The notes under the pieces were generated by a model that searched no databases, had not been told where the DNA came from, and was given only the letters and a program-made list of their open reading frames with translations. Made by a program: the position numbers and the translations under genes. This document shows positions 2,138 through 64,000 of a stretch of DNA of 64,000 bases, in pieces (position 1 is the first letter of the stretch; each line of letters begins with the position of its first letter). The DNA is from Anolis carolinensis (lineage: Eukaryota). The stretch lies in the NCBI RefSeq assembly GCF_035594765.1, contig NC_085845.1:143546897-143610896 (forward strand), in the 5' to 3' direction.

Positions 2138-3304
2138 GGTAGAAAATTTGGTGAATCTGAATTAAAAAAAATCCCCCCACCTTGAATTTGAATCAAGCCA
2201 CTATCCCAAACACCTCCTATCATAACCATTTTCAATTCATTTATGCTCTCATGAAAACAATATATAGATTTTGATTACATAATTATGATAAATTAAAACC
2301 TTATATTGAATATAAAGCATGTGTATTATGCGGATGCATGTGTAAATACATGTGTCCATGTTTTCACTCTCTAAGCCAAATACCAACTTTCTAGATGAGA
2401 GAAGATGTCAGTAGGCTTCATCTAGAGTAGTTCCTAAAACTACTCAAATCATTGAGTTTAATTTCAAGCTGTGGGTCAATAAACAAAGCTGTGCAAGAAA
2501 AAATATTAAATCCCAAACATAACTGGGCTGACTGAGACCAAGTCCAGACTGGATAAGATTGATCTAATTTACTTCCTAAGATCAGTAATTGGGGCCAATT
2601 TAGGCTGATTAAGATATTCAGATGTCAACAATAAATGGAGAGAAACCAAGATTGAACTTTCTAACATGACCATATAAAGAAAAGAGAATTGGATTTCATT
2701 CTCTGGCAGGTCTAATATGCAAACTTGGACCAGAATTTTAGCAGCACTTTCCTATCACCTTTCTGAGGTGTCACCATAATGTTATATAGTCAATTATCTG
2801 CAAGTCTAGCACAAATACATATAGCAACTCCAGGGACAGAGGGAAACAGATGCATCATTAGTTACACATCGTTTACAGTTGTAACAATTATTGTTGTTTT
2901 TACTGTTACATCTGATAATTAGTCAAAGTTAATCAATCAGAAGGTAAATCTGTACCAACAGTATAAGTACACATGATGCTATCAGAGAAATGGGGAAATG
3001 CACTTTGTTCCTGGTAAGAGTGGTAAACCTCTTTCATCCTGGGCAAGAGATTTTTTTTTAACAATTACAAAAATGTCAAAACATGTGTTTGTCAAGTTTA
3101 AAGAAATCTTGAAAAAGAGACTCTGGAACTGATGAGAATTGTCATAATTATTCTGTGCTAAAAAAAGGTTTTACACAGAAAACTGCAATTTTTGCATAAG
3201 AAACAGCATTTTTCTGCTGCACAAAAATCACATAAGAATGGTCTTCAAACACTGCATACGTTTTAAATACTTTCTTTCAGAAATAATGAATTAGCTGACA
3301 TTAT

Positions 3305-3900
3305 TTACAGCCTTACAATTCACCAGAAGGACCTCTGTCTTGTCTAGATTCAATTTAAATTTGTTTGCCCTCATCCAGTCTGACACAGCTGCCAAGCACT
3401 GGTTCAGGACCTGCATGATCTCTCCCAACGGCTTCATGTAAATATTAAATAACATGGGGAACAATATTGAGCCCTGTGGGACCCCACAGGATAATGGTTG
3501 CAAGGCCGAGCAGATGTCTCCCAGCAACAACTTCTTGGACCGACCCTCCAGGAAGTAATGGAGCCACTGCAAAACAGTGCCTCCGAGTCCCATACCTGCA
3601 AGGCTTCCCAGAAGGATTCCATGGTCAACAGTATCGAAGGCCACTGAGAGGTCCAGGGGAACCAACTGGAACACACTCCCCCTGTCCAGTTCCTGGCATA
3701 GATCATCTACTAAGGCGACCAAGGCTTTTTCGGTTCCATGTCCCGGCCTGAAGCCGAACTGTGCTGGATCTAGAAAATCAGTGTCTACAAAGAATTCCTG
3801 GAGTTGCGAGATCACCACACATTCCATGACTTTGCCCAAGTATGGGAGATTTGAAACTGGCTAATACTTCACTAATTGAGTGGGGTCCAGTAATGGTTTG
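3305..3900 (-). mobile_element. L2-clade LINE reverse transcriptase fragment with the YADD region deleted
   Basis: ORF 3291-3839 has RT motifs QFGFRPGHGTE, LDLSVAFDTVDH, GVPQGSIL and WMRANKFKLNLDKTE; a stop lies upstream and no YADD motif is present. Confidence 0.92.
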
Positions 3901-5771: not shown

Positions 5772-5910
5772 AGGTAAAGACAAAGGTTTTCCACTGACAT
5801 CAAGTCTAGTTATGTCTGACTCTGGGGGTTGGTGCTCATCTCTATTTCTAAGCTGAAGAGCTGGTGTTTCCCGTAGACACCTCCAAGGCCATGTGGCTGG
5901 CATGACTGCT
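5772..5910 (-). mobile_element. Sauria SINE 3' fragment
   Basis: 'aggtaaagacaaaggttttcc...ggttggtgctcatctc...ccatgtggctggcatgactgc'. Confidence 0.85.
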
Positions 5911-12416: not shown

Positions 12417-12966
12417 TACATAATTCATTGAGTAATACAGACTTCATTCTTTGGCTATACCGTGCTTGTATTCTGAGAAGCACACAGAGACTGTAAGATG
12501 TTTTTAATTGAGCCAGTCTGACCTTAAGATGGGGCAAATAAACTATTAAAATGATTTGTTTCTATTCCTGTGACAAGCTTATTTGTCAGTTTGGATCTTG
12601 TAATTCGTTCCAGCAATGCAGTTGAATATTGATTTCAGTGTGGTTGCTTGTATCTGAAACTTTGAACTAATGAGATGAAAATTCTTCTCAGCAGGACCAG
12701 TAACCTTATCTGGTGGGAGGAGACCTTGAAAAGGACCAAGGAAATACCCTTTCCATGAAGAACAGTTGGTTTAGTTACTACGTCGGCAGCCCTTGTTAAC
12801 ACGGCTTGTCATGAATATGTGCTTATAATTACTCCACTGCTGATGGTGCTTGCAGTAATACAGTAGTCAGTCAGTTAAGTAACGATAGCAGAGATGAAAA
12901 CTGCAAACTCAGCTGGAGGTCAGCGGGTTTTTTAAATTGTTTCATTCATTGTTTTCTTAATTTAAT

Positions 12967-13120
12967 AGGTAAAGGTAAACGTTTCCCCTGTCATTAAGTC
13001 TAGTCATGCCCAACTCTGTGGGCTGGTGCTCATCTATATTTCTAAGCCAAAGAACTGGCATTGTCCTTAGACACCTCCAAGGCCATGTGGTTGGCATGAC
13101 TGCATGGAGCGCTGTTACTT
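12967..13120 (-). mobile_element. Sauria SINE 3' fragment
   Basis: 'aggtaaaggtaaacgtttcccctg...ggccatgtggttggcatgactgcatggagcgctgttac'. Confidence 0.85.
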
Positions 13121-24296: not shown

Positions 24297-25419
24297 GAGT
24301 TACCCTCTGCTCAATCGAGTAGGTGCCAAAAGACAAAGCAAAAGACCAGCCCAGGAACTGAAAATGTGCCTAAAAACTGGAAAACATCAACTCACTATAA
24401 ATGTAGAAAACGATGTCATTGACCATCTTTTTTGGAAAACAAATTTTAAAAATCACTGATCTGTGCTATTTATAAGAAAGCTTAAAGTTATGCTAAAATC
24501 CTCCACAAATTGGCTTAGTTTGGAATGTGTCACCTGTTTTTTAAGCAGCCAAATAAAACCTTTTGCTTCTTCTGCCTGTTTGATAAGATCATTTAATCTC
24601 ATCTTGCTGTTTTCTGAAGACTAGGTCTGAGATAGCCCTTTTGGTAATTAAATTCTGTTGCTTTATTCTTTCCAGATGAGCTTTGGCAAGAATTAAAAAA
24701 TTCCATTTGAAGATTAAAGGTCTCTGTTTCTTAAGGAGTTTGGGTCCGTTCACCCTTTTAATCACAAATCTTCCTTAAGTCTTACTACAATGACAGCAAT
24801 TTCATAATCCTTTGTGATATACCAGATTGTATTCATGATATTTCAGTTCAAAATGAGTCAGATTTTTTCTCCCTTTTCAAAGTAATATTCCATTAATCCA
24901 TTAAGAGTCAAGTAGAAATTATAATTTGATACATAGTCCATATGCGAATTCTGTCTTCTGGAGGCATTTTGATAAATGTAGTGTACTTTACCTTTGCCAG
25001 GCATATGCTTTAATGATTGACAGGGAGCTATTCCTTAAGAAGTCTACCAAGCATTGCAAGAAAGAAAAATTCTGTGCATGCATTCCTACAGCATCAGGTA
25101 CTTCTATTAAAAGTAAGTTAGAGAATTTAAGTTTTGTTAATTTTGTGCAATTTCATTTTTATATTTGAGATTGAAAGAATATTTGAATAGAAGAAAAACT
25201 TGAATCAAGAGATTTTCCCACAAGACCTTTAATGTTTAAAATTCTGATTTTTGAATCCTAGTTTCTTTAATTATGCATAAACTAATGTTGCCACAATTTT
25301 TTATCTGAGAAGCGCCTCATATTTAACATCTATCTAGAAGGCGTATAGCCCACCTGTTATTGGAAATAGCTGTACACACTGAATGTGGCTGATAGAACCA
25401 GATGAGAGGTTTCCAGCAC

Positions 25420-25772
25420 CTGGACCTCCTCTTCTGGGACCTCCGAGGAACAAAGGGAAGGAGGGACAGAGGGAGGGAGGGCCTAAGCAAGCCCCAGGCC
25501 TCAAAACAGCCTCCGTGTGTGTTGACACGGATGTGATGCGCCTCTATTGGCCCCTGCTGAAGAAGAGCCAGAACTTTGCTGTCTACGGGTACAGGACCTA
25601 TGCCATCAGAAGAATAAAAGATGCTTTCAGAGAAAACAAAAACATCAATGATTCAACAGAAATTGAAACACTACTAAACAAAGCAAAAACTAATCTGAAA
25701 ATCATATGCCGGCAGCTAGATATTCTTACCCTGCTCTGTAAGACTGTCTGGAGATTTGGAGTTCTACATTAG
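25420..25772 (+). pseudogene. LYRM4: Processed (retro)copy of LYRM4/ISD11 with lost start codon and non-canonical C-terminus
   Basis: 25506-25715 encodes 'VMRLYWPLLKKSQNFAVYGYRTYAIRRIKDAFRENKNINDSTEIETLLNKAKTNLKIICRQ', which closely matches vertebrate LYRM4 (YRTYAVRRIRDAFRENKNV...NKAK..L..IRRQ). No intron is present. The ATG-equivalent position reads ACA and LYR has become LYW. Confidence 0.88.
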
Positions 25773-55200: not shown

Positions 55201-55644
55201 CATATAATGATACATTACAATATTTTGCACAATAATACTGTAATGTATTGATGTAACTTAAAGACTTCTTACTCCAGATTATACTGTTGCCAGCGTTGAA
55301 TTATTTTACTATACCTGCCTTCCCACTGTCCACAGTGATGAGAAGTTCAATGGGATATGCTATCTTCACTTTGCTTGTTTCTTATGGAATGGAAGCTTCT
55401 GGAATTTTTCTAACAGCTGAATTGATTAACAAATTCAATATGCAAAGGGATCTTGTAACCCCTTAGAGACTGAGAAATAGAAGTCAGTAACATAAGCTTC
55501 AGAGTAAGTCTTCTTCCTCAGATGCGTGCCTAGATGCTTAGTCAGATTTAGTTTATGAAAGCTTATGCTACAACTGTGTTCTCTCAGTCTCTAAGGTGTT
55601 ATAAGATCCTTTTGCCTTGTTTGACCTGGAAAGGTTTGGTTTCT

Positions 55645-55824
55645 NNNNNNNNNNNNNNNNNNNNNNNNNNNNNNNNNNNNNNNNNNNNNNNNNNNNNNNN
55701 NNNNNNNNNNNNNNNNNNNNNNNNNNNNNNNNNNNNNNNNNNNNNNNNNNNNNNNNNNNNNNNNNNNNNNNNNNNNNNNNNNNNNNNNNNNNNNNNNNNN
55801 NNNNNNNNNNNNNNNNNNNNNNNN
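55645..55824. other. Assembly gap (180 N)
   Basis: Run of N bases. Confidence 1.
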
Positions 55825-55927: not shown

Positions 55928-56213
55928 AGGTAAAGGTAAAGGTTTCCCCCTGACGTTAAGTCCAGTCATGTCTGACTCTGGGGGTTGGTGCTCATCTCCA
56001 TTTCTAAGCCGAAGAGCCGGCGTTGTCCGTAGACACCTCCAAGGTCATGTGGCCGGCATGACTGCCAGAGCGGTACCTATTGATCTACTCACATTGGCAT
56101 GTTTTCGAACTGCTAGGTTGGCAGGAGCTGGAGCTAACAGCGGCCGCTCCCGGGGATTGAACCTGGGACTTTTCGGTCTCCAGCTCAGTGCTTTAACGCA
56201 CTTCACCTCCGGG
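55928..56213 (-). mobile_element. Sauria SINE with internal deletions
   Basis: (AGGTAA)n tail, conserved core and tRNA head. Confidence 0.9.
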
Positions 56214-57620: not shown

Positions 57621-57951
57621 GGCCCCTGGTGGTGGCGCAGTGTGTTAAAGCGCTAAGCTGCTGAACTTGCAGACCGAAAAGTCCCAGGTTCAAATCCCGG
57701 GAGCGGAATGAGCGCCCGTTGTTAGCCCCAGCTCCTGCCAACGTAGCAGTTCGAAAACATGCAAATGTGAGTAGATCAATAGGTACCGCTCTGGCGGGAA
57801 GGTAACTGCGCTCCATGCAGTCATGCCGGCCACATGACCTTGGAAGTGTCTACGGACAACATTGGCTCTTCGGCTTAGAAATGGAGATGAACACCAACCC
57901 CCAGGGTCGGTCACAACTGGACTTAACATCAGGGGAAAACCTTTACCTTTT
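57621..57951 (+). mobile_element. Full-length Sauria SINE
   Basis: A and B boxes 'ggtggcgcagtgtg...ggttcaaatccc', conserved core and ACCTTT tail. Confidence 0.92.
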
Positions 57952-58140: not shown

Positions 58141-58181
<41 letters not shown>

Positions 58182-58249
58182 CACTTTTTCTCCCCCAAAG
58201 GAGCCTCAAAGTAGCTAGTTGTATTCTGCAGTTTTCATAGCTCCCAAAC

Positions 58250-58293
<44 letters not shown>

Positions 58294-58361
58294 CACTTTT
58301 TCTCCTCCAAAGGAGCCTCAAAGTAGCTAGTTGTATTCTGCAGTTTTCATAGCTCCCAAAC

Positions 58362-58402
<41 letters not shown>

Positions 58403-58487
58403 CACTTTTTCTCCCCAAAGGCGCTTCAAAGTAGCTAGTTGTATTCTGCAGTTTTCATAGCTCCCACATTATTATTATTATTATTAT
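57962..58487. repeat. Compound tandem array: ~69-bp unit, four copies separated by variable (TAT)n tracts
   Basis: 'ccactttttctcccccaaaggagcctcaaagtagctagttgtattctgcagttttcatagctccca' at 57991, 58181, 58293 and 58402; degenerate fifth copy near 57536. Confidence 0.92.
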
Positions 58488-58583
58488 TTCTTACAATTTA
58501 TCAATAAAAATTATATATGTGTGTGTGTCTTTTAAAACCGTCATGAAAGGAAAGGTCAGCCTTGCATGGCTGGGGCCCCTCAC

Positions 58584-60304: not shown

Positions 60305-60476
60305 CAGGGATTCCCAAAGTGGGCGCTACCGCCCCCTGGTGAGCACTGCAGCAATCCAGGGGAGCGGTGATGGCCACAGGTAGATAGATCTTTCTGTTTA
60401 ATTACTATTTAAAAATTTAAAAATATATTTTTTTCTGGAAAGGGGGTGGTAGGCCAAATAAGTTTGGGAACCACTG
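60305..60476. mobile_element. hAT MITE with perfect 8-bp TSD
   Basis: TIRs CAGGGATTCCCAAA / TTTGGGAACCACTG; TSD CCGTAGAC at 60297-60304 and 60477-60484. Confidence 0.9.
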
Positions 60477-60650
60477 CCGTAGACCATGGTATCTTTCTGG
60501 GATGCCTTGTGGAAATGGGACTTGGTGGCCTGTTTAGCAGCGGCTCTGGTCCTTCCTGGAGGTGTTCATTGGTTGTGGGATCCTGCAGGGTTCAGTCTTG
60601 ATGACATGGCTTTTTGGGGGCCCGATGACCCCTTTGGCTTTGCTTTATAG

Positions 60651-61421: not shown

Positions 61422-61620
61422 GAGGGTTGGAAGAGACCCTTTGGGCCATTGAGTCCAATCCCCTTCTGCCTTTGTGCATTCTGGATTATCCAATGCATTT
61501 TTGTAGTCAATGTTTTCAATACATCATGATATTTTTGCCCCGACAAGGAGCTCTGGCCTGGGCTGGTCCAGGAGGTCACTAAGAGTCGGAAGCAACTGAA
61601 TGAATAAACAACAACAAAGG
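61420..61620. mobile_element. Mosaic: CR1 3' end (-), inverted MITE fragment, BovB/RTE 3' tail (+)
   Basis: Three segments: 'gggttggaagagaccc...gagtccaatcccc'; 'ttctggattatccaatgcatttttgtagtc'; 'gacaaggagctctggcctgggctggtccaggaggtcactaagagtcggaagcaactgaatgaataaacaacaac'. Confidence 0.7.
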
Positions 61621-61744
61621 TCCCATAGGGTGTGATGTCGGAAGTTATGAGTGGGAAGAGCAAGGTGGTGGGATTGGGGAAATAAGGTGTGTATTTGGAT
61701 GGATGCGATTTTGAAAACTGCCTGTTTCTTTGTTTTACTTCATA

Positions 61745-62057
61745 CAGTAAAGGTAAAGGTTTCCCCTGACATTAAGTCCATTTGTGACCAACTCTGGGGG
61801 TGGGTGCTCATCTCCATTTCTAAGCCAAAGAGCCGGCGTTGTCCATAGACATCTCCAAGGTCATGTGGCCGGCATGACTGCATGGAGCACTGTTACCTTC
61901 CCGCCGGAGCGGTACCTATTGATCTACTCACATTGGCATGTTTTCAAACTGCTAGGTTGGCAGGAGCTGGAGCTAACAGCGGCCTCTTCCGGGGTTTGAA
62001 CCTGGGACCTTTCGGTCTCCAGCTCAGTGCTTTAATGCACTTCACCACTGGGGTTCA
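61745..62057 (-). mobile_element. Sauria SINE with 12-bp TSD
   Basis: TSD TTTTACTTCATA at 61733-61744 and 62058-62069; an empty paralogous site is visible at ~63800. Confidence 0.92.
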
Positions 62058-62156
62058 TTTTACTTCATAGAACGTAATAAAAGTTTTATAGCAGAAAGGG
62101 AAGCTTCGTTGGCACCTCTGCTAACCCTGCTCTTGTCCTTCTTCTTTACAGCCATC

Positions 62157-63704
62157 ATGCCGAGGTGGCTGGAACTCCTGAGGAGATCCAACCGCATCTC
62201 TCCTGCAGAGACAGAGAAGGGGGTGTCCAGCCCACCCTCAAAGTTGAGGAAATTATGGAGAAGGATCAAGAGCAGCATGCTGTCATGCATGAACTCCAGG
62301 TCTGCCGAGGCTGCCAAGCAGAGGAGGAAGGAGGCCTCCACCAAGCTGAAGGAGAGGAGAAGGGGCCACCTGGCCAGCAAGTCTCCTTCCCTCGAGACCA
62401 TCGTGGAGGACTTGGAGGAGGCTGAGGCCCAGGAAGAGCCAGAGGAGCCCAGGATGAAGGAGAGGCGAGGGAGCGGCCTGGCCAGCCTGCCTCCTTCCCT
62501 CGAGATCATTGTGGAGGACTTGGAGGAGGCTGAGGCCCAGGAAGAGCCAGAGGAGCCCAGGATGAAGGAGAGGCGAGGGAGCGACCTGGCCACCCTGCCT
62601 CCTTCCCTCGAGATCATCGTGGAGGACTTGGAGGAGGCTGAAGCCCAGGAAGAGCCAGAGGAGCCCAGGATGAAGGAGAGGCGAGGGAGCGGCCTGGCCA
62701 GCCTGCCTCCTTCCCTCGAGATCATCGTGGAGGACTTGGAGGAGGCTGAAGCCCAGGAAGAACCAGAGGAGCCCAGGATGAAGGAGAGGCGAGGGAGCGG
62801 CCTGGCCAGCCTGCCTCCTTCCCTCGAGATCATTGTGGAGGACTTGGAGGAGGCTGGGGCCCAGGAAGAGCCAGAGGAGCCCAGGATGAAGGAGAGGCGA
62901 GGGAGCGGCCTGGCCAGCCTGCCTCCTTCCCTCGAGATCATCATGGAGGACTTGGAGGAGGCTGAAGCCCAGGAAGAGCCAGAGGAGCCCAGGATGAAGG
63001 AGAGGCGAGGGAGCGGCCTGGCCAGCCTGCCTCCTTCCCTCGAGATCATCGTGGAGGACTTGGAGGAGGCTGAAGCCCAGGAAGAACCAGAGGAGCCCAG
63101 GATGAAGGAGAGGCGAGGGAGCGGCCTGGCCAGCCTGCCTCCTTCCCTCGAGATCATTGTGGAGGACTTGGAGGAGGCTGAGGCCCAGGAAGAGCCAGAG
63201 GAGCCCAGGATGAAGGAGAGGTGAGGGAGCGGCCTGGCCAGCCTGCCTCCTTCCCTCGAGATCATCGTGGAGGACTTGGAGGAGGCTGAAGCCCAGGAAG
63301 AGCCAGAGGAGCCCAGGATGAAGGAGAGGCGAGGGAGCGGCCTGGCCAGCCTGCCTCCTTCCCTCGAGATCATTGTGGAGGACTTGGAGGAGGCTGAAGC
63401 CCAGGAAGAGCCAGAGGAGCCCAGGATGAAGGAGAGGCGAGGGAGCGGCCTGGCCAGCCTGCCTCCTTCCCTCGAGATCATTGTGGAGGACTTGGAGGAG
63501 GCTGAGGCCCAGGAAGAGCCAGAGGAGCCCAGGATGAAGGAGAGGCGAGGGAGCGGCCTGGCCAGCCTGCCTCCTTCCCTCGAGATCATCGTGGAGGACT
63601 TGGAGGAGGCTGAAGCCCAGGAAGAGCCAGAGGAGCCCAGGATGAAGGAAAGGCGAAGGAGCAGCCTGGCCATCCTGCCTCCTTCCCTCCACATCATCGA
63701 CTGA
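62157..63704 (+). CDS. Uncharacterised gene-like ORF with 36-aa Glu-rich repeats (LxxIxE and RRGS motifs); in-frame TGA at 63222-63224
   Basis: Branch point 'gctaac', pyrimidine tract and 'ttacag|ccatcATG' precede the ATG. The ORF runs 355 aa to the TGA, or 515 codons if read through. The N-terminus is conserved in a second copy at 63899. Confidence 0.6.
62346..63704 (+). repeat. 108-bp coding minisatellite, ~12.5 copies
   Basis: One diverged unit, 11 near-identical units (ATG at 62454+108n) and a partial unit at 63642. Confidence 0.97.
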
Positions 63705-63898
63705 ACAAATAAACAACAAACGTCTCAGAGGGTGTGATGTCGGAAGTCATGAGTGGAAAGAGCGAGGTGGTGGGATTTTGAAAACTGCCTGTTTCTTTGT
63801 TTTACTTCATAGAATGTAATAAAAGTTTTGTAGCAGAAAGGGAAGCTTTGTTGGCACCTCTGCTAACCCTGCTCTTATCCTTCTTTTTTACAGCCATC

Positions 63899-64000
63899 AT
63901 GCCGAGGTGGCTGGATAGCCTCAGAAGATCCAACCGGATGTCTCCTTCAGAGACTGAGCAGGTGGTGGCCAGCCTGCCCTCTAAGTTGAGGAGAATATGG
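63899..64000 (+). CDS. Second tandem paralog of the repeat-protein ORF (runs off the window)
   Basis: Same acceptor and ATG context 'ttacagccatcATG'; MPRWLDSLRRSNRMSPSETEQVVASLPSKLRRIW vs MPRWLELLRRSNRISPAETEKGVSSPPSKLRKLW. Confidence 0.6.
   Translation, partial: MPRWLDSLRRSNRMSPSETEQVVASLPSKLRRIW

What the first reader, a model, noticed from the sequence alone, without database searches (positions are those of the whole stretch)
62157..63704. Candidate novel multivalent PP2A-B56 docking protein: 12 tandem LxxIxE motifs, most paired with a PKA site
Seen: after a basic, amphipathic N-terminus, the ORF repeats MKERRGSGLASLPPSLEIIVEDLEEAEAQEEPEEPR. All 12 units contain L-E-[IT]-I-[VM]-E followed by acidic residues, and 10 have an intact RRGS. 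Established: LxxIxE with a downstream acidic stretch is the PP2A-B56 docking motif, and RRxS is the PKA consensus. Inference: this is an intrinsically disordered, lineage-specific scaffold, sponge or inhibitor for PP2A-B56, regulated by PKA, with valency set by minisatellite copy number. I do not recognise it as a known gene.
Basis: partly seen in the sequence, partly recalled or inferred. Interest (0 to 1): 0.85.

Follow-up and report, generated by a model that had tools for sequence, protein, structure and literature searches.

The report
Orphan anole repeat ORF with PP2A-B56 motifs
A green-anole-specific open reading frame built from a recently expanded 36-codon minisatellite really does carry a near-ideal PP2A-B56 docking motif in every repeat, but a stop codon cuts the frame after eight repeats, and nothing yet shows that a protein is made.

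Summary
The repeat is real: a 108-bp (36-codon) minisatellite, 12 full units plus a partial one, follows a 63-codon basic leader. Every full unit has L-E-[IT]-I-[VM]-E and 10 have RRGS.

The intact ORF is 355 aa, with 8 LxxIxE and 7 RRGS.

The motif reading holds on paper. P1 is Leu, P4 is Ile and P6 is Glu, with acidic residues at P2, P7 and P9. A basic patch lies 11-16 residues upstream, as in KIF4A. The closest analogue is the engineered 4x LxxIxE B56 inhibitor.

Whether a protein exists is open:
- No homologue turned up in 1.84 billion representative proteins, Pfam or PDB.
- The one paralogue (two units) also carries a premature stop.
- Between the copies dN/dS is 0.57-0.85, and ORF survival fits neutral drift.
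- The best-conserved part is about 125 bp upstream of the ATG.

In favour:
- An exact 355-aa gene call is on record for the anole assembly.
- Shared array variants are all synonymous.
- The aligned coding region has no indels.
- Small, possibly RNA, contig sets hold the sequence.

Verdict: a young orphan gene or proto-gene. The B56-sponge idea is plausible but unproven.

The parts
61581..61613 (+). BovB-like 3' tail (AATAAA at 61603-61608) that marks the left edge of the duplicated unit
   Evidence: Read. From 61595 it is homologous to 63700-63777. The BovB identity is from my memory of the BovB tail consensus, not a tool result; only one copy lies in the window.
61707..61744 (+). Upstream conserved block, part 1 (38 nt, 100% identical to copy 2 at 63774-63811)
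61745..62057 (.). SINE insertion that splits the upstream block, flanked by a 12-bp target-site duplication TTTTACTTCATA (61733-61744 and 62058-62069); absent from copy 2
   Evidence: Alignment. Other copies lie in the window at 55930-56213, 57632-57950, 12969-13118, 5774-5909 and 1821-2034.
62070..62156 (+). Upstream conserved block, part 2. It holds a TATA-like TAATAAAAG (62075-83), a CTAAC branch-point-like site (62121-25), a pyrimidine tract, AG (62150-51) and CCATC before the ATG. It is either a core promoter plus 5'UTR or the end of an intron.
   Evidence: 5 transitions in about 87 nt against copy 2. The whole flank differs at 6.5% against 14.7% in the ORF.
62157..63224 (+). Uninterrupted ORF, 355 aa plus TGA: a 63-aa basic leader and 8 full repeat units (8 LxxIxE, 7 RRGS)
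   Evidence: an exact gene call is on record in GCA_035594765.1
62346..63701 (+). Coding-register minisatellite: 12 full 36-codon units plus a 20-codon partial unit, with a 3-unit higher-order pattern (units 2/5/8/11 and 4/7 share variants)
63222..63224 (+). In-frame TGA (CGA to TGA, a CpG transition) in unit 9
63225..63704 (+). Rest of the repeat frame after the stop (units 9-12 and the partial unit), ending in TGA 63702-63704 at the duplication junction
63708..63713 (+). AATAAA 4 nt after the terminal TGA, in the BovB-like tail that heads copy 2
63774..64000 (+). Copy 2: conserved upstream block (63774-63898), then an ATG at 63899. It runs off the window. In L001 it has the leader plus about 1.7 units, with TAG at codon 87.
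62060..63697 (-). Antisense ORF of 545 aa, open through the whole array and the leader. It shares wobble positions with the plus frame.

Best explanation
This is a young ORF with no detectable relative outside the green anole (an orphan gene or proto-gene), formed in three steps.

1. An ancestral unit of roughly 130 codons (a basic leader plus about two 36-codon units) was duplicated in tandem. The left breakpoint lay in a BovB-like tail and the right one inside a repeat unit. Copy 1 therefore takes its final stop and AATAAA from that tail.

2. In copy 1 the two units expanded recently, in 3-unit blocks, to 12.5 near-identical units.

3. A CpG transition then put a TGA in unit 9, leaving a 355-aa ORF.

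If the ORF is transcribed and translated, the product is a basic helical head followed by eight acidic repeats. Each repeat carries a basic patch (R-MKERR) that includes an AGC-kinase site (RRGS), an 8-residue linker, and a near-optimal LxxIxE docking site for the B56 subunit of PP2A.

The inferred mechanism is multivalent, competitive occupation of the B56 pocket, as with the engineered 4x LxxIxE inhibitor. The RRGS serines could be both B56 substrates and a charge switch on the basic patch.

Shown: the DNA anatomy, the stop codon, the motif quality and the absence of relatives. Inferred: transcription, translation, B56 binding and kinase control.
For: Anatomy.

A gene with exactly the 355-aa product is on record for assembly GCA_035594765.1, which is the green anole. 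It is the only gene called in 21 kb, although longer ATG-started ORFs lie there.

The ATG is the first one after a TATA-like box. It sits in a roughly 125-nt block that is 96% identical between the two copies, while the ORF differs by 14.7%.

The unit is a multiple of 3. The three array variants shared by several units are all synonymous, and the five singletons are all non-synonymous (Fisher p=0.018).

The copies show no indel in 375 aligned coding nt, against three (3 bp, 35 bp and a SINE) in 199 nt of flank.

Six small contig sets (43-69 Mb) of the same species hold 52-57% of the words, while 250-444 Mb sets hold none. This looks like tissue-restricted RNA.

Motif rules: [LMFI]xx[ILV]xE with Leu at P1, Ile at P4 and invariant Glu at P6, and acidic residues at P2 and P7-9 raising affinity (PMC10970375). 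All of these are met.

A basic patch within about 15 residues N-terminal of the motif aids B56 binding in KIF4A, AIM1, NHS and RepoMan (PMC7108865). Here R/K lie at -16, -14, -12 and -11.

For 1x, 2x and 4x LxxIxE constructs, affinity, stoichiometry and mitotic phenotype scale with copy number. PP2A-B56 also prefers basophilic phosphosites (PMC7327492).

L..I.E survives in both units of the diverged paralogue, as LNKIME and LDIIVE.
Against: An in-frame stop lies in unit 9 of copy 1 and at codon 87 of copy 2.

Between the copies dN/dS is 0.57 for the leader and 0.85 with the first unit, and other frames give similar values.

A neutral simulation gives a mean of 2 stops and P(1 or fewer)=0.40, so ORF survival carries no signal.

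The synonymous pattern in the array fits the minus-strand frame equally well.

There is no relative in 1.84 billion representative proteins, in the word-indexed search, in Pfam or in PDB.

The exact protein is not in the 15-billion protein collection, so the origin of the gene call is unknown and it may be ab initio.

AlphaFold2 without an alignment puts the motif in a helix with pLDDT around 80, whereas known motifs lie in disordered regions.

The neighbourhood is rich in transposons and pseudogene fragments.
Confidence: 0.4

Rival explanations
1. There is no working gene. The locus is a decaying duplicate, or DNA that never coded, in a junk-rich region, and it happens to hold a GC-rich minisatellite. 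The ORF is open because the unit lacks stops in 3 of 6 frames and is a multiple of 3. The LxxIxE and RRGS matches are chance features of one 36-residue unit copied 12 times.
For: Both copies carry premature stops. Divergence is near neutral and ORF survival is as expected under drift. No homologue exists anywhere. Three of six frames are open, and the antisense ORF is longer. The 3' end is an accident of a duplication junction. The neighbours are TAP2 fragments with frame breaks, a LYRM4 retrocopy and SINEs. Strict LxxIxE arises in 6.7% of shuffles of the unit.
Against: A gene call exists. The upstream block is conserved. Shared variants are synonymous only. The coding region has no indels, against three in the flank. 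Small contig sets hold the sequence. Both motifs together arise in only 0.1% of shuffles, and there is also a basic patch at the published distance.
Confidence: 0.4
2. The constrained element is the roughly 125-nt block upstream of the ATG, acting as a promoter or other regulatory or RNA element. The locus gives a non-coding transcript, or acts as a variable-number repeat at the DNA or RNA level, and the ORF is incidental.
For: The flank differs at 6.5% with 11 transitions to 2 transversions. The ORF differs at 14.7% with 23 to 32 (Fisher p=0.011). Synonymous divergence (0.23-0.28) also exceeds flank divergence.
Against: The same pattern would follow from a recent gene-conversion tract. Rfam gives only chance-level SNORA7-like hits (20 bits against a threshold of 100). 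A SINE has been tolerated inside the block in copy 1.
Confidence: 0.12
3. The coding strand is the minus strand: the uninterrupted 545-aa Ser/Gly/Leu/Arg-rich ORF at 62060-63697.
For: It is longer and has no stop. The array variants are synonymous or non-synonymous in exactly the same pattern as on the plus strand.
Against: The antisense strand of an acidic coding repeat is often open. I saw no polyadenylation signal downstream on the minus strand, and nothing upstream of its ATG marks it as a start (my reading). The frame is broken in copy 2. The recorded gene call is on the plus strand.
Confidence: 0.03

Closest known systems
Engineered 4x(LxxIxE) PP2A-B56 inhibitor (Kruse et al. 2020, PMC7327492)
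   Same: Tandem high-affinity LxxIxE motifs separated by spacers. In that work, affinity, the number of B56 molecules bound and the mitotic phenotype rose with copy number from 1 to 4. The anole ORF would be an 8-valent (formerly 12-valent) natural counterpart.
   Different: The inhibitor is synthetic and has been tested. The anole ORF is untested, has a basic head domain, carries a kinase site in each spacer, and its motif lies in a predicted helix.
KIF4A C-terminal tail and other basic-patch-dependent B56 interactors (Wang et al. 2020, PMC7108865)
   Same: The architecture is a basic patch, a linker of about 10 residues, LxxIxE and an acidic tail. The KIF4A patch lies within about 15 residues N-terminal of the motif. 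Here R/K lie at -16 to -11.
   Different: KIF4A has one motif in a conserved motor protein. No sequence homology was found, so the resemblance is in layout only.
BubR1 KARD and RepoMan LxxIxE motifs
   Same: The core L..I.E is the same, and negative charge at P2 and P7-9 raises affinity.
   Different: In those proteins the charge comes from Cdk1 or Plk1 phosphorylation within the motif. Here it is fixed Glu/Asp, and the only phosphosite lies 9 residues upstream of the motif.
Lineage-specific genes with coding minisatellites, and young orphan or de novo genes (general class; from my own knowledge)
   Same: Shared features are a single coding exon, an in-frame tandem repeat of recent origin, no homologues, fast evolution, and a birth aided by duplication and transposon sequence.
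   Different: Membership needs evidence of expression and translation, which I could not obtain.

Membership tests
PP2A-B56 LxxIxE docking-motif proteins | Core motif [LMFI]xx[ILV]xE with invariant Glu at P6 | tested here: met
   LEIIVE, LEIIME or LETIVE in all 12 full units, 8 of them in the intact ORF; rule from PMC10970375
PP2A-B56 LxxIxE docking-motif proteins | High-affinity determinants: Leu at P1, Ile at P4, acidic or phospho residues at P2 and P7-9 | tested here: met
   P1 Leu, P2 Glu, P4 Ile, P7 Asp, P9 Glu (rule)
PP2A-B56 LxxIxE docking-motif proteins | Motif lies in an accessible, intrinsically disordered region | tested here: inconclusive
   AlphaFold2 without an alignment predicts a helix over the SLEIIVEDLEEAEAQE segment (pLDDT about 80), between Pro-flanked low-confidence linkers. 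Single-sequence models over-predict helices in Glu/Ala/Leu-rich stretches.
PP2A-B56 LxxIxE docking-motif proteins | Motif conserved in relatives | tested here: inconclusive
   There is only one paralogue. L..I.E is kept in both of its units (LNKIME, LDIIVE) despite 15% divergence, but the first is followed by a stop. No orthologues were available.
PP2A-B56 LxxIxE docking-motif proteins | Direct, motif-dependent binding to B56 | not testable with these tools
   Needs ITC or a pull-down with LxxIxE against AxxAxA peptides
Basic-patch-dependent B56 interactors (KIF4A type) | Cluster of basic residues within about 15 residues N-terminal of LxxIxE | tested here: met
   R-16, K-14, R-12 and R-11 relative to the Leu; criterion from PMC7108865
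PKA substrates | R-R-x-S/T followed by a hydrophobic residue at +1 (consensus from my own knowledge) | tested here: inconclusive
   RRGS is present in 10 units, but +1 is Gly. The site also fits [RK]xRxxS, so any basophilic AGC kinase could use it.
AKAP-type amphipathic helix that binds the PKA regulatory subunit | Paired hydrophobic residues at helix positions 4/5 and 8/9 (pattern recalled from memory) | tested here: not met
   In the stretch LEIIVEDLE, position 9 is Glu. No register of the unit fits (reading).
Expressed protein-coding gene | Uninterrupted ORF over the claimed span | tested here: not met
   TGA at 63222-63224. Only 62157-63224 is uninterrupted.
Expressed protein-coding gene | Transcript on the coding strand | not testable with these tools
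The run table is only suggestive.
Expressed protein-coding gene | Purifying selection on the protein | tested here: inconclusive
   dN/dS is 0.57-0.85 between the copies. Drift explains ORF survival. Within the array, shared variants are all synonymous (p=0.018), but that also holds for the antisense frame.
Pfam UPF0449 / Neurokinin_B | A single domain match above the family threshold | tested here: not met
   The whole-protein scores are sums over the repeats, and no stretch passes on its own. One unit alone gives no hit at E up to 10.

The most novel reading that the evidence does not exclude
A natural, minisatellite-encoded, multivalent binder or decoy substrate of PP2A-B56 in anoles. Each 36-residue unit would join a kinase-switchable basic patch to a near-optimal LxxIxE site, so the dose of phosphatase sequestration would be set by a fast-evolving, probably polymorphic, repeat number. 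It would be a gene born recently from a duplication junction and a transposon tail.
Probability: 0.15. Interest if true: 0.75.

Novelty: new variant of a known kind. Interest (0 to 1): 0.4.

Why it matters
If the protein is made and binds B56, it would be the first natural counterpart I know of to the engineered tandem-LxxIxE inhibitor. It would also show a short docking motif being amplified by minisatellite expansion, with phosphatase-binding valency varying between individuals. Finally, it would be a dated case of gene birth by tandem duplication, a transposon-supplied stop and poly(A) signal, and repeat expansion.

If it is not expressed, it shows how copying one repeat unit can produce an impressive-looking set of motifs from a single chance match.

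Tried and rejected
Pfam hits to UPF0449 and Neurokinin_B are sums over the repeats, not real matches.

The PDB hits are calmodulin-like matches to acidic sequence at E of 0.09 and above. The leader alone gives nothing at E up to 10.

Homologue searches returned nothing: the word-indexed search with the 355-aa ORF and a full HMMER scan of 1.84 billion representatives with the leader plus two units. Exact look-ups in the protein collection also failed.

I considered a link between the leader and the TAP2 elbow helix, because of a short resemblance around a Trp-Arg stretch and a TAP2 fragment 600 bp downstream of copy 2. I rejected it. No transmembrane-like sequence follows in any frame, and no PDB hit appears.

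I considered a common transposon origin for the unit. Only the inserted SINE has other copies in 73 kb.

I considered a small RNA in the conserved block. Rfam gives only chance-level hits.

An AKAP helix reading does not fit the pattern.

Local scripts read the whole window on the closed machine only.

The exact 86-aa product of copy 2 and the LYRM4-like ORF are not on record as genes.

The scan's other note on this stretch (s1-517407) had already seen the tandem duplication.

Full report
**1. What is in the sequence**

Tandem Repeats Finder reports a 108-bp unit, 12.5 copies, 96% matches and no indels at 62347-63699. In the frame that opens with the ATG at 62157 there is a 63-codon unique leader. 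It is followed by one diverged unit (62346), eleven near-identical units (62454-63641), and a 20-codon partial unit ending in TGA at 63702-63704.

All 12 full units carry L-E-[IT]-I-[VM]-E followed by D-L-E-E, and ten carry RRGS. The leader is very basic (17 K+R, pI 11.7) and the unit is acidic (pI 4.2).

Unit 9 has TGA where the other units have CGA (63222-63224). The uninterrupted ORF is therefore 62157-63224, 355 aa, with 8 LxxIxE and 7 RRGS.

The unit consensus is open in three of six frames. The minus strand carries a longer, unbroken 545-aa ORF at 62060-63697.

**2. How the locus was built**

The sequence CCATCATG plus the leader occurs twice, at 62152 and 63894. The exact 355-aa product is on record as a called gene in GCA_035594765.1, record CM069371.1. 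That assembly is the green anole (PMC11754216). The look-up also gave locus L001, which equals window 52157 to 73224 and so shows 9 kb beyond the window.

Copy 2 has the leader plus only about 1.7 units. It reads through a first unit with LNKIME and hits TAG at codon 87. The frame then continues through a second unit with RRGS and LDIIVE, ending in D-F-L-G-N and a stop.

The spacer after copy 1 (63700-63811) is homologous to the DNA before copy 1 (61595-61744). Homology starts in what I recognise from memory as a BovB-type 3' tail. Copy 1's last unit breaks off in mid-motif (S-L-H-I-I-D) and runs into that tail, which supplies the TGA and an AATAAA at 63708-63713.

The first and last units of copy 1 resemble units a and b of copy 2. 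The interior units are near-identical and show a 3-unit higher-order pattern: units 2/5/8/11 and units 4/7 share variants.

The order of events was therefore a tandem duplication, then a recent expansion from about 2 to 12.5 units in copy 1, then the CpG transition to TGA. A SINE with a 12-bp target-site duplication lies 88 nt upstream of copy 1's ATG and is absent from copy 2.

**3. Is it a gene?**

Evidence for:
- The gene call is the only one in 21 kb, although longer ATG-started ORFs lie there. The caller is therefore selective.
- The ATG is the first one downstream of a TATA-like TAATAAAAG (62075-83). It sits right after a sequence that also reads as a strong 3' splice site: CTAAC, a pyrimidine tract and CAG.
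- The roughly 125 nt upstream are 96% identical between the copies. The whole 199-nt flank differs at 6.5% (11 transitions, 2 transversions), whereas the ORF differs at 14.7% (23 transitions, 32 transversions; Fisher p=0.011).
- There is no indel in 375 aligned coding nt, against a 3-bp indel, a 35-bp indel and a SINE in the flank.
- Within the array, the three variants shared by several units are all synonymous and the five singletons are all non-synonymous, including the stop (Fisher p=0.018).
- Six small contig sets (43-69 Mb) of the same species hold 52-57% of the sampled words, while sets of 250-444 Mb hold none. That is what tissue-restricted RNA would look like.

Evidence against:
- Both copies carry premature stops.
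- dN/dS between the copies is 0.57 for the leader and 0.85 with the first unit, and other frames give values in the same range.
- With 55 random substitutions the expected number of new stops is 2, and P(1 or fewer)=0.40. Survival of the ORF therefore says nothing.
- The synonymous pattern in the array holds equally for the minus-strand frame that shares wobble positions.
- Synonymous divergence (0.23-0.28) also exceeds flank divergence. The contrast between flank and ORF therefore points to constraint or gene conversion on the flank, not to positive selection on the protein.
- The exact protein is not in the 15-billion protein collection. The origin of the gene call is therefore unknown, and it may be ab initio.
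- No listed run is on record as RNA.
Transcription, strand, start site and splicing are all untested.

**4. Relatives**

There are none. The word-indexed search with the 355-aa ORF found nothing. Nor did a full HMMER scan of 1.84 billion representatives with the leader plus two units. The leader alone gave nothing against PDB or Pfam.

The Pfam hits to UPF0449 and Neurokinin_B are sums over repeats with no passing stretch, and one unit alone gives nothing. These libraries hold few annotated squamate proteins, so 'anole-specific' means 'no detectable relative here', not a demonstrated age.

**5. The motif reading**

By the published rules the motif is near optimal. The core is [LMFI]xx[ILV]xE. 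Leu at P1 and Ile at P4 are preferred, Glu at P6 is invariant, and acidic or phospho residues at P2 and P7-9 raise affinity (PMC10970375). The unit has Leu, Glu, Ile and Glu at P1, P2, P4 and P6, then Asp at P7 and Glu at P9.

A subset of B56 interactors (KIF4A, AIM1, NHS, RepoMan) need a basic patch within about 15 residues N-terminal of the motif, which contacts a conserved acidic patch on B56 (PMC7108865). Here R/K lie at -16, -14, -12 and -11, and the RRGS serine lies at -9, at the edge of that patch. Phosphorylation there would reduce the patch's positive charge. That gives a concrete way a kinase could weaken docking.

PP2A-B56 also prefers basophilic phosphosites, and it acts on sites near the docking motif (PMC7327492). 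The serines could therefore equally be substrates.

The same paper built 1x, 2x and 4x LxxIxE constructs. Affinity, stoichiometry and mitotic delay rose with copy number, and the 4x form was a specific competitive inhibitor. That construct is the closest functional analogue.

Caveats:
- RRGS has Gly at +1 and also fits [RK]xRxxS, so it is a generic AGC-kinase site.
- AlphaFold2 without an alignment places the motif in a helix with pLDDT around 80, whereas known motifs lie in disordered regions.
- The 12 motifs are one event copied. Strict LxxIxE arises in 6.7% of shuffles of the unit, and both motifs together in 0.1%.

**6. Surroundings**

The region is rich in transposons and gene fragments:
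- TAP2-like exons lie 0.6-3.5 kb downstream of copy 2 on the same strand (TAP2 residues about 266-292 and 306-356 matched). At least one exon needs a frame change to read through.
- An intronless LYRM4-like ORF at 25383-25772 covers residues 8-74 of 91, with the LYR motif changed to LYW.
- Several SINE copies are present.

This setting suits both a pseudogene graveyard and a fast-evolving MHC-linked region.

**7. Verdict**

My odds:
- About 0.4 for a young transcribed and translated orphan gene whose product carries functional-grade B56 motifs. The specific 'kinase-gated multivalent B56 sponge' reading lies within this, at about 0.15 overall.
- About 0.4 for no working gene.
- About 0.12 that the constrained element is the upstream block and the ORF is incidental.
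- About 0.03 for the minus strand.

Another first-stage note of this scan (s1-517407) had already seen the duplication and the BovB-tail stop. I checked the duplication. I checked the tail's identity only against my memory of the BovB consensus.

Noticed in passing
L001:12639-15584 (about window 64795-67740, beyond the window end): TAP2-like exons lie on the plus strand just downstream of copy 2. They match human TAP2 residues about 266-292 and 306-356, and by eye further exons reach the start of the nucleotide-binding domain. The exon at 12740-12887 needs at least one frame change, so this looks like a 5'-truncated, decaying TAP2 copy. That hints the region is MHC-linked.
   Followed up: partly
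window 25383-25772 (+): An intronless LYRM4 (ISD11)-like ORF matches residues 8-74 of the 91-aa human protein in one frame (E=2.4e-20). It has unrelated sequence before and after, and the LYR motif is changed to LYW. It is probably a processed pseudogene.
   Followed up: partly
window 61745-62057: A tRNA-type SINE is inserted 88 nt upstream of copy 1's ATG, with a 12-bp target-site duplication. It splits the otherwise 96-100% conserved upstream block. Other copies lie at 55930-56213, 57632-57950, 12969-13118, 5774-5909 and 1821-2034.
   Followed up: yes
window 62084-62187 and 63826-63929 (-): Weak SNORA7-like covariance-model hits fall in the conserved block of both copies (19-20 bits against a gathering score of 100, E 0.3-0.8). 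They are at chance level, and the pair reflects the duplication.
   Followed up: no
window 62157-62531 against L001:11743-12117: Between the two copies, transversions outnumber transitions in the ORF (32 to 23), whereas the flank has 2 to 11. I have no firm explanation. It could be adaptive amino-acid change, conversion from a third copy elsewhere, or constraint on the flank.
   Followed up: partly
window about 55590-55800: A run of N (assembly gap or masked stretch), left untouched.
   Followed up: no
window 58142-58488: A 112-bp tandem repeat of 3.1 copies, each unit starting with (ATT)13.
   Followed up: no
They lie inside the stretch that another note (s1-517443) reads as a DIS3L exon fragment.
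   Followed up: no
window 3291-3839 (-): A LINE reverse-transcriptase fragment. A related piece lies at about 60413-60598 (+).
   Followed up: no
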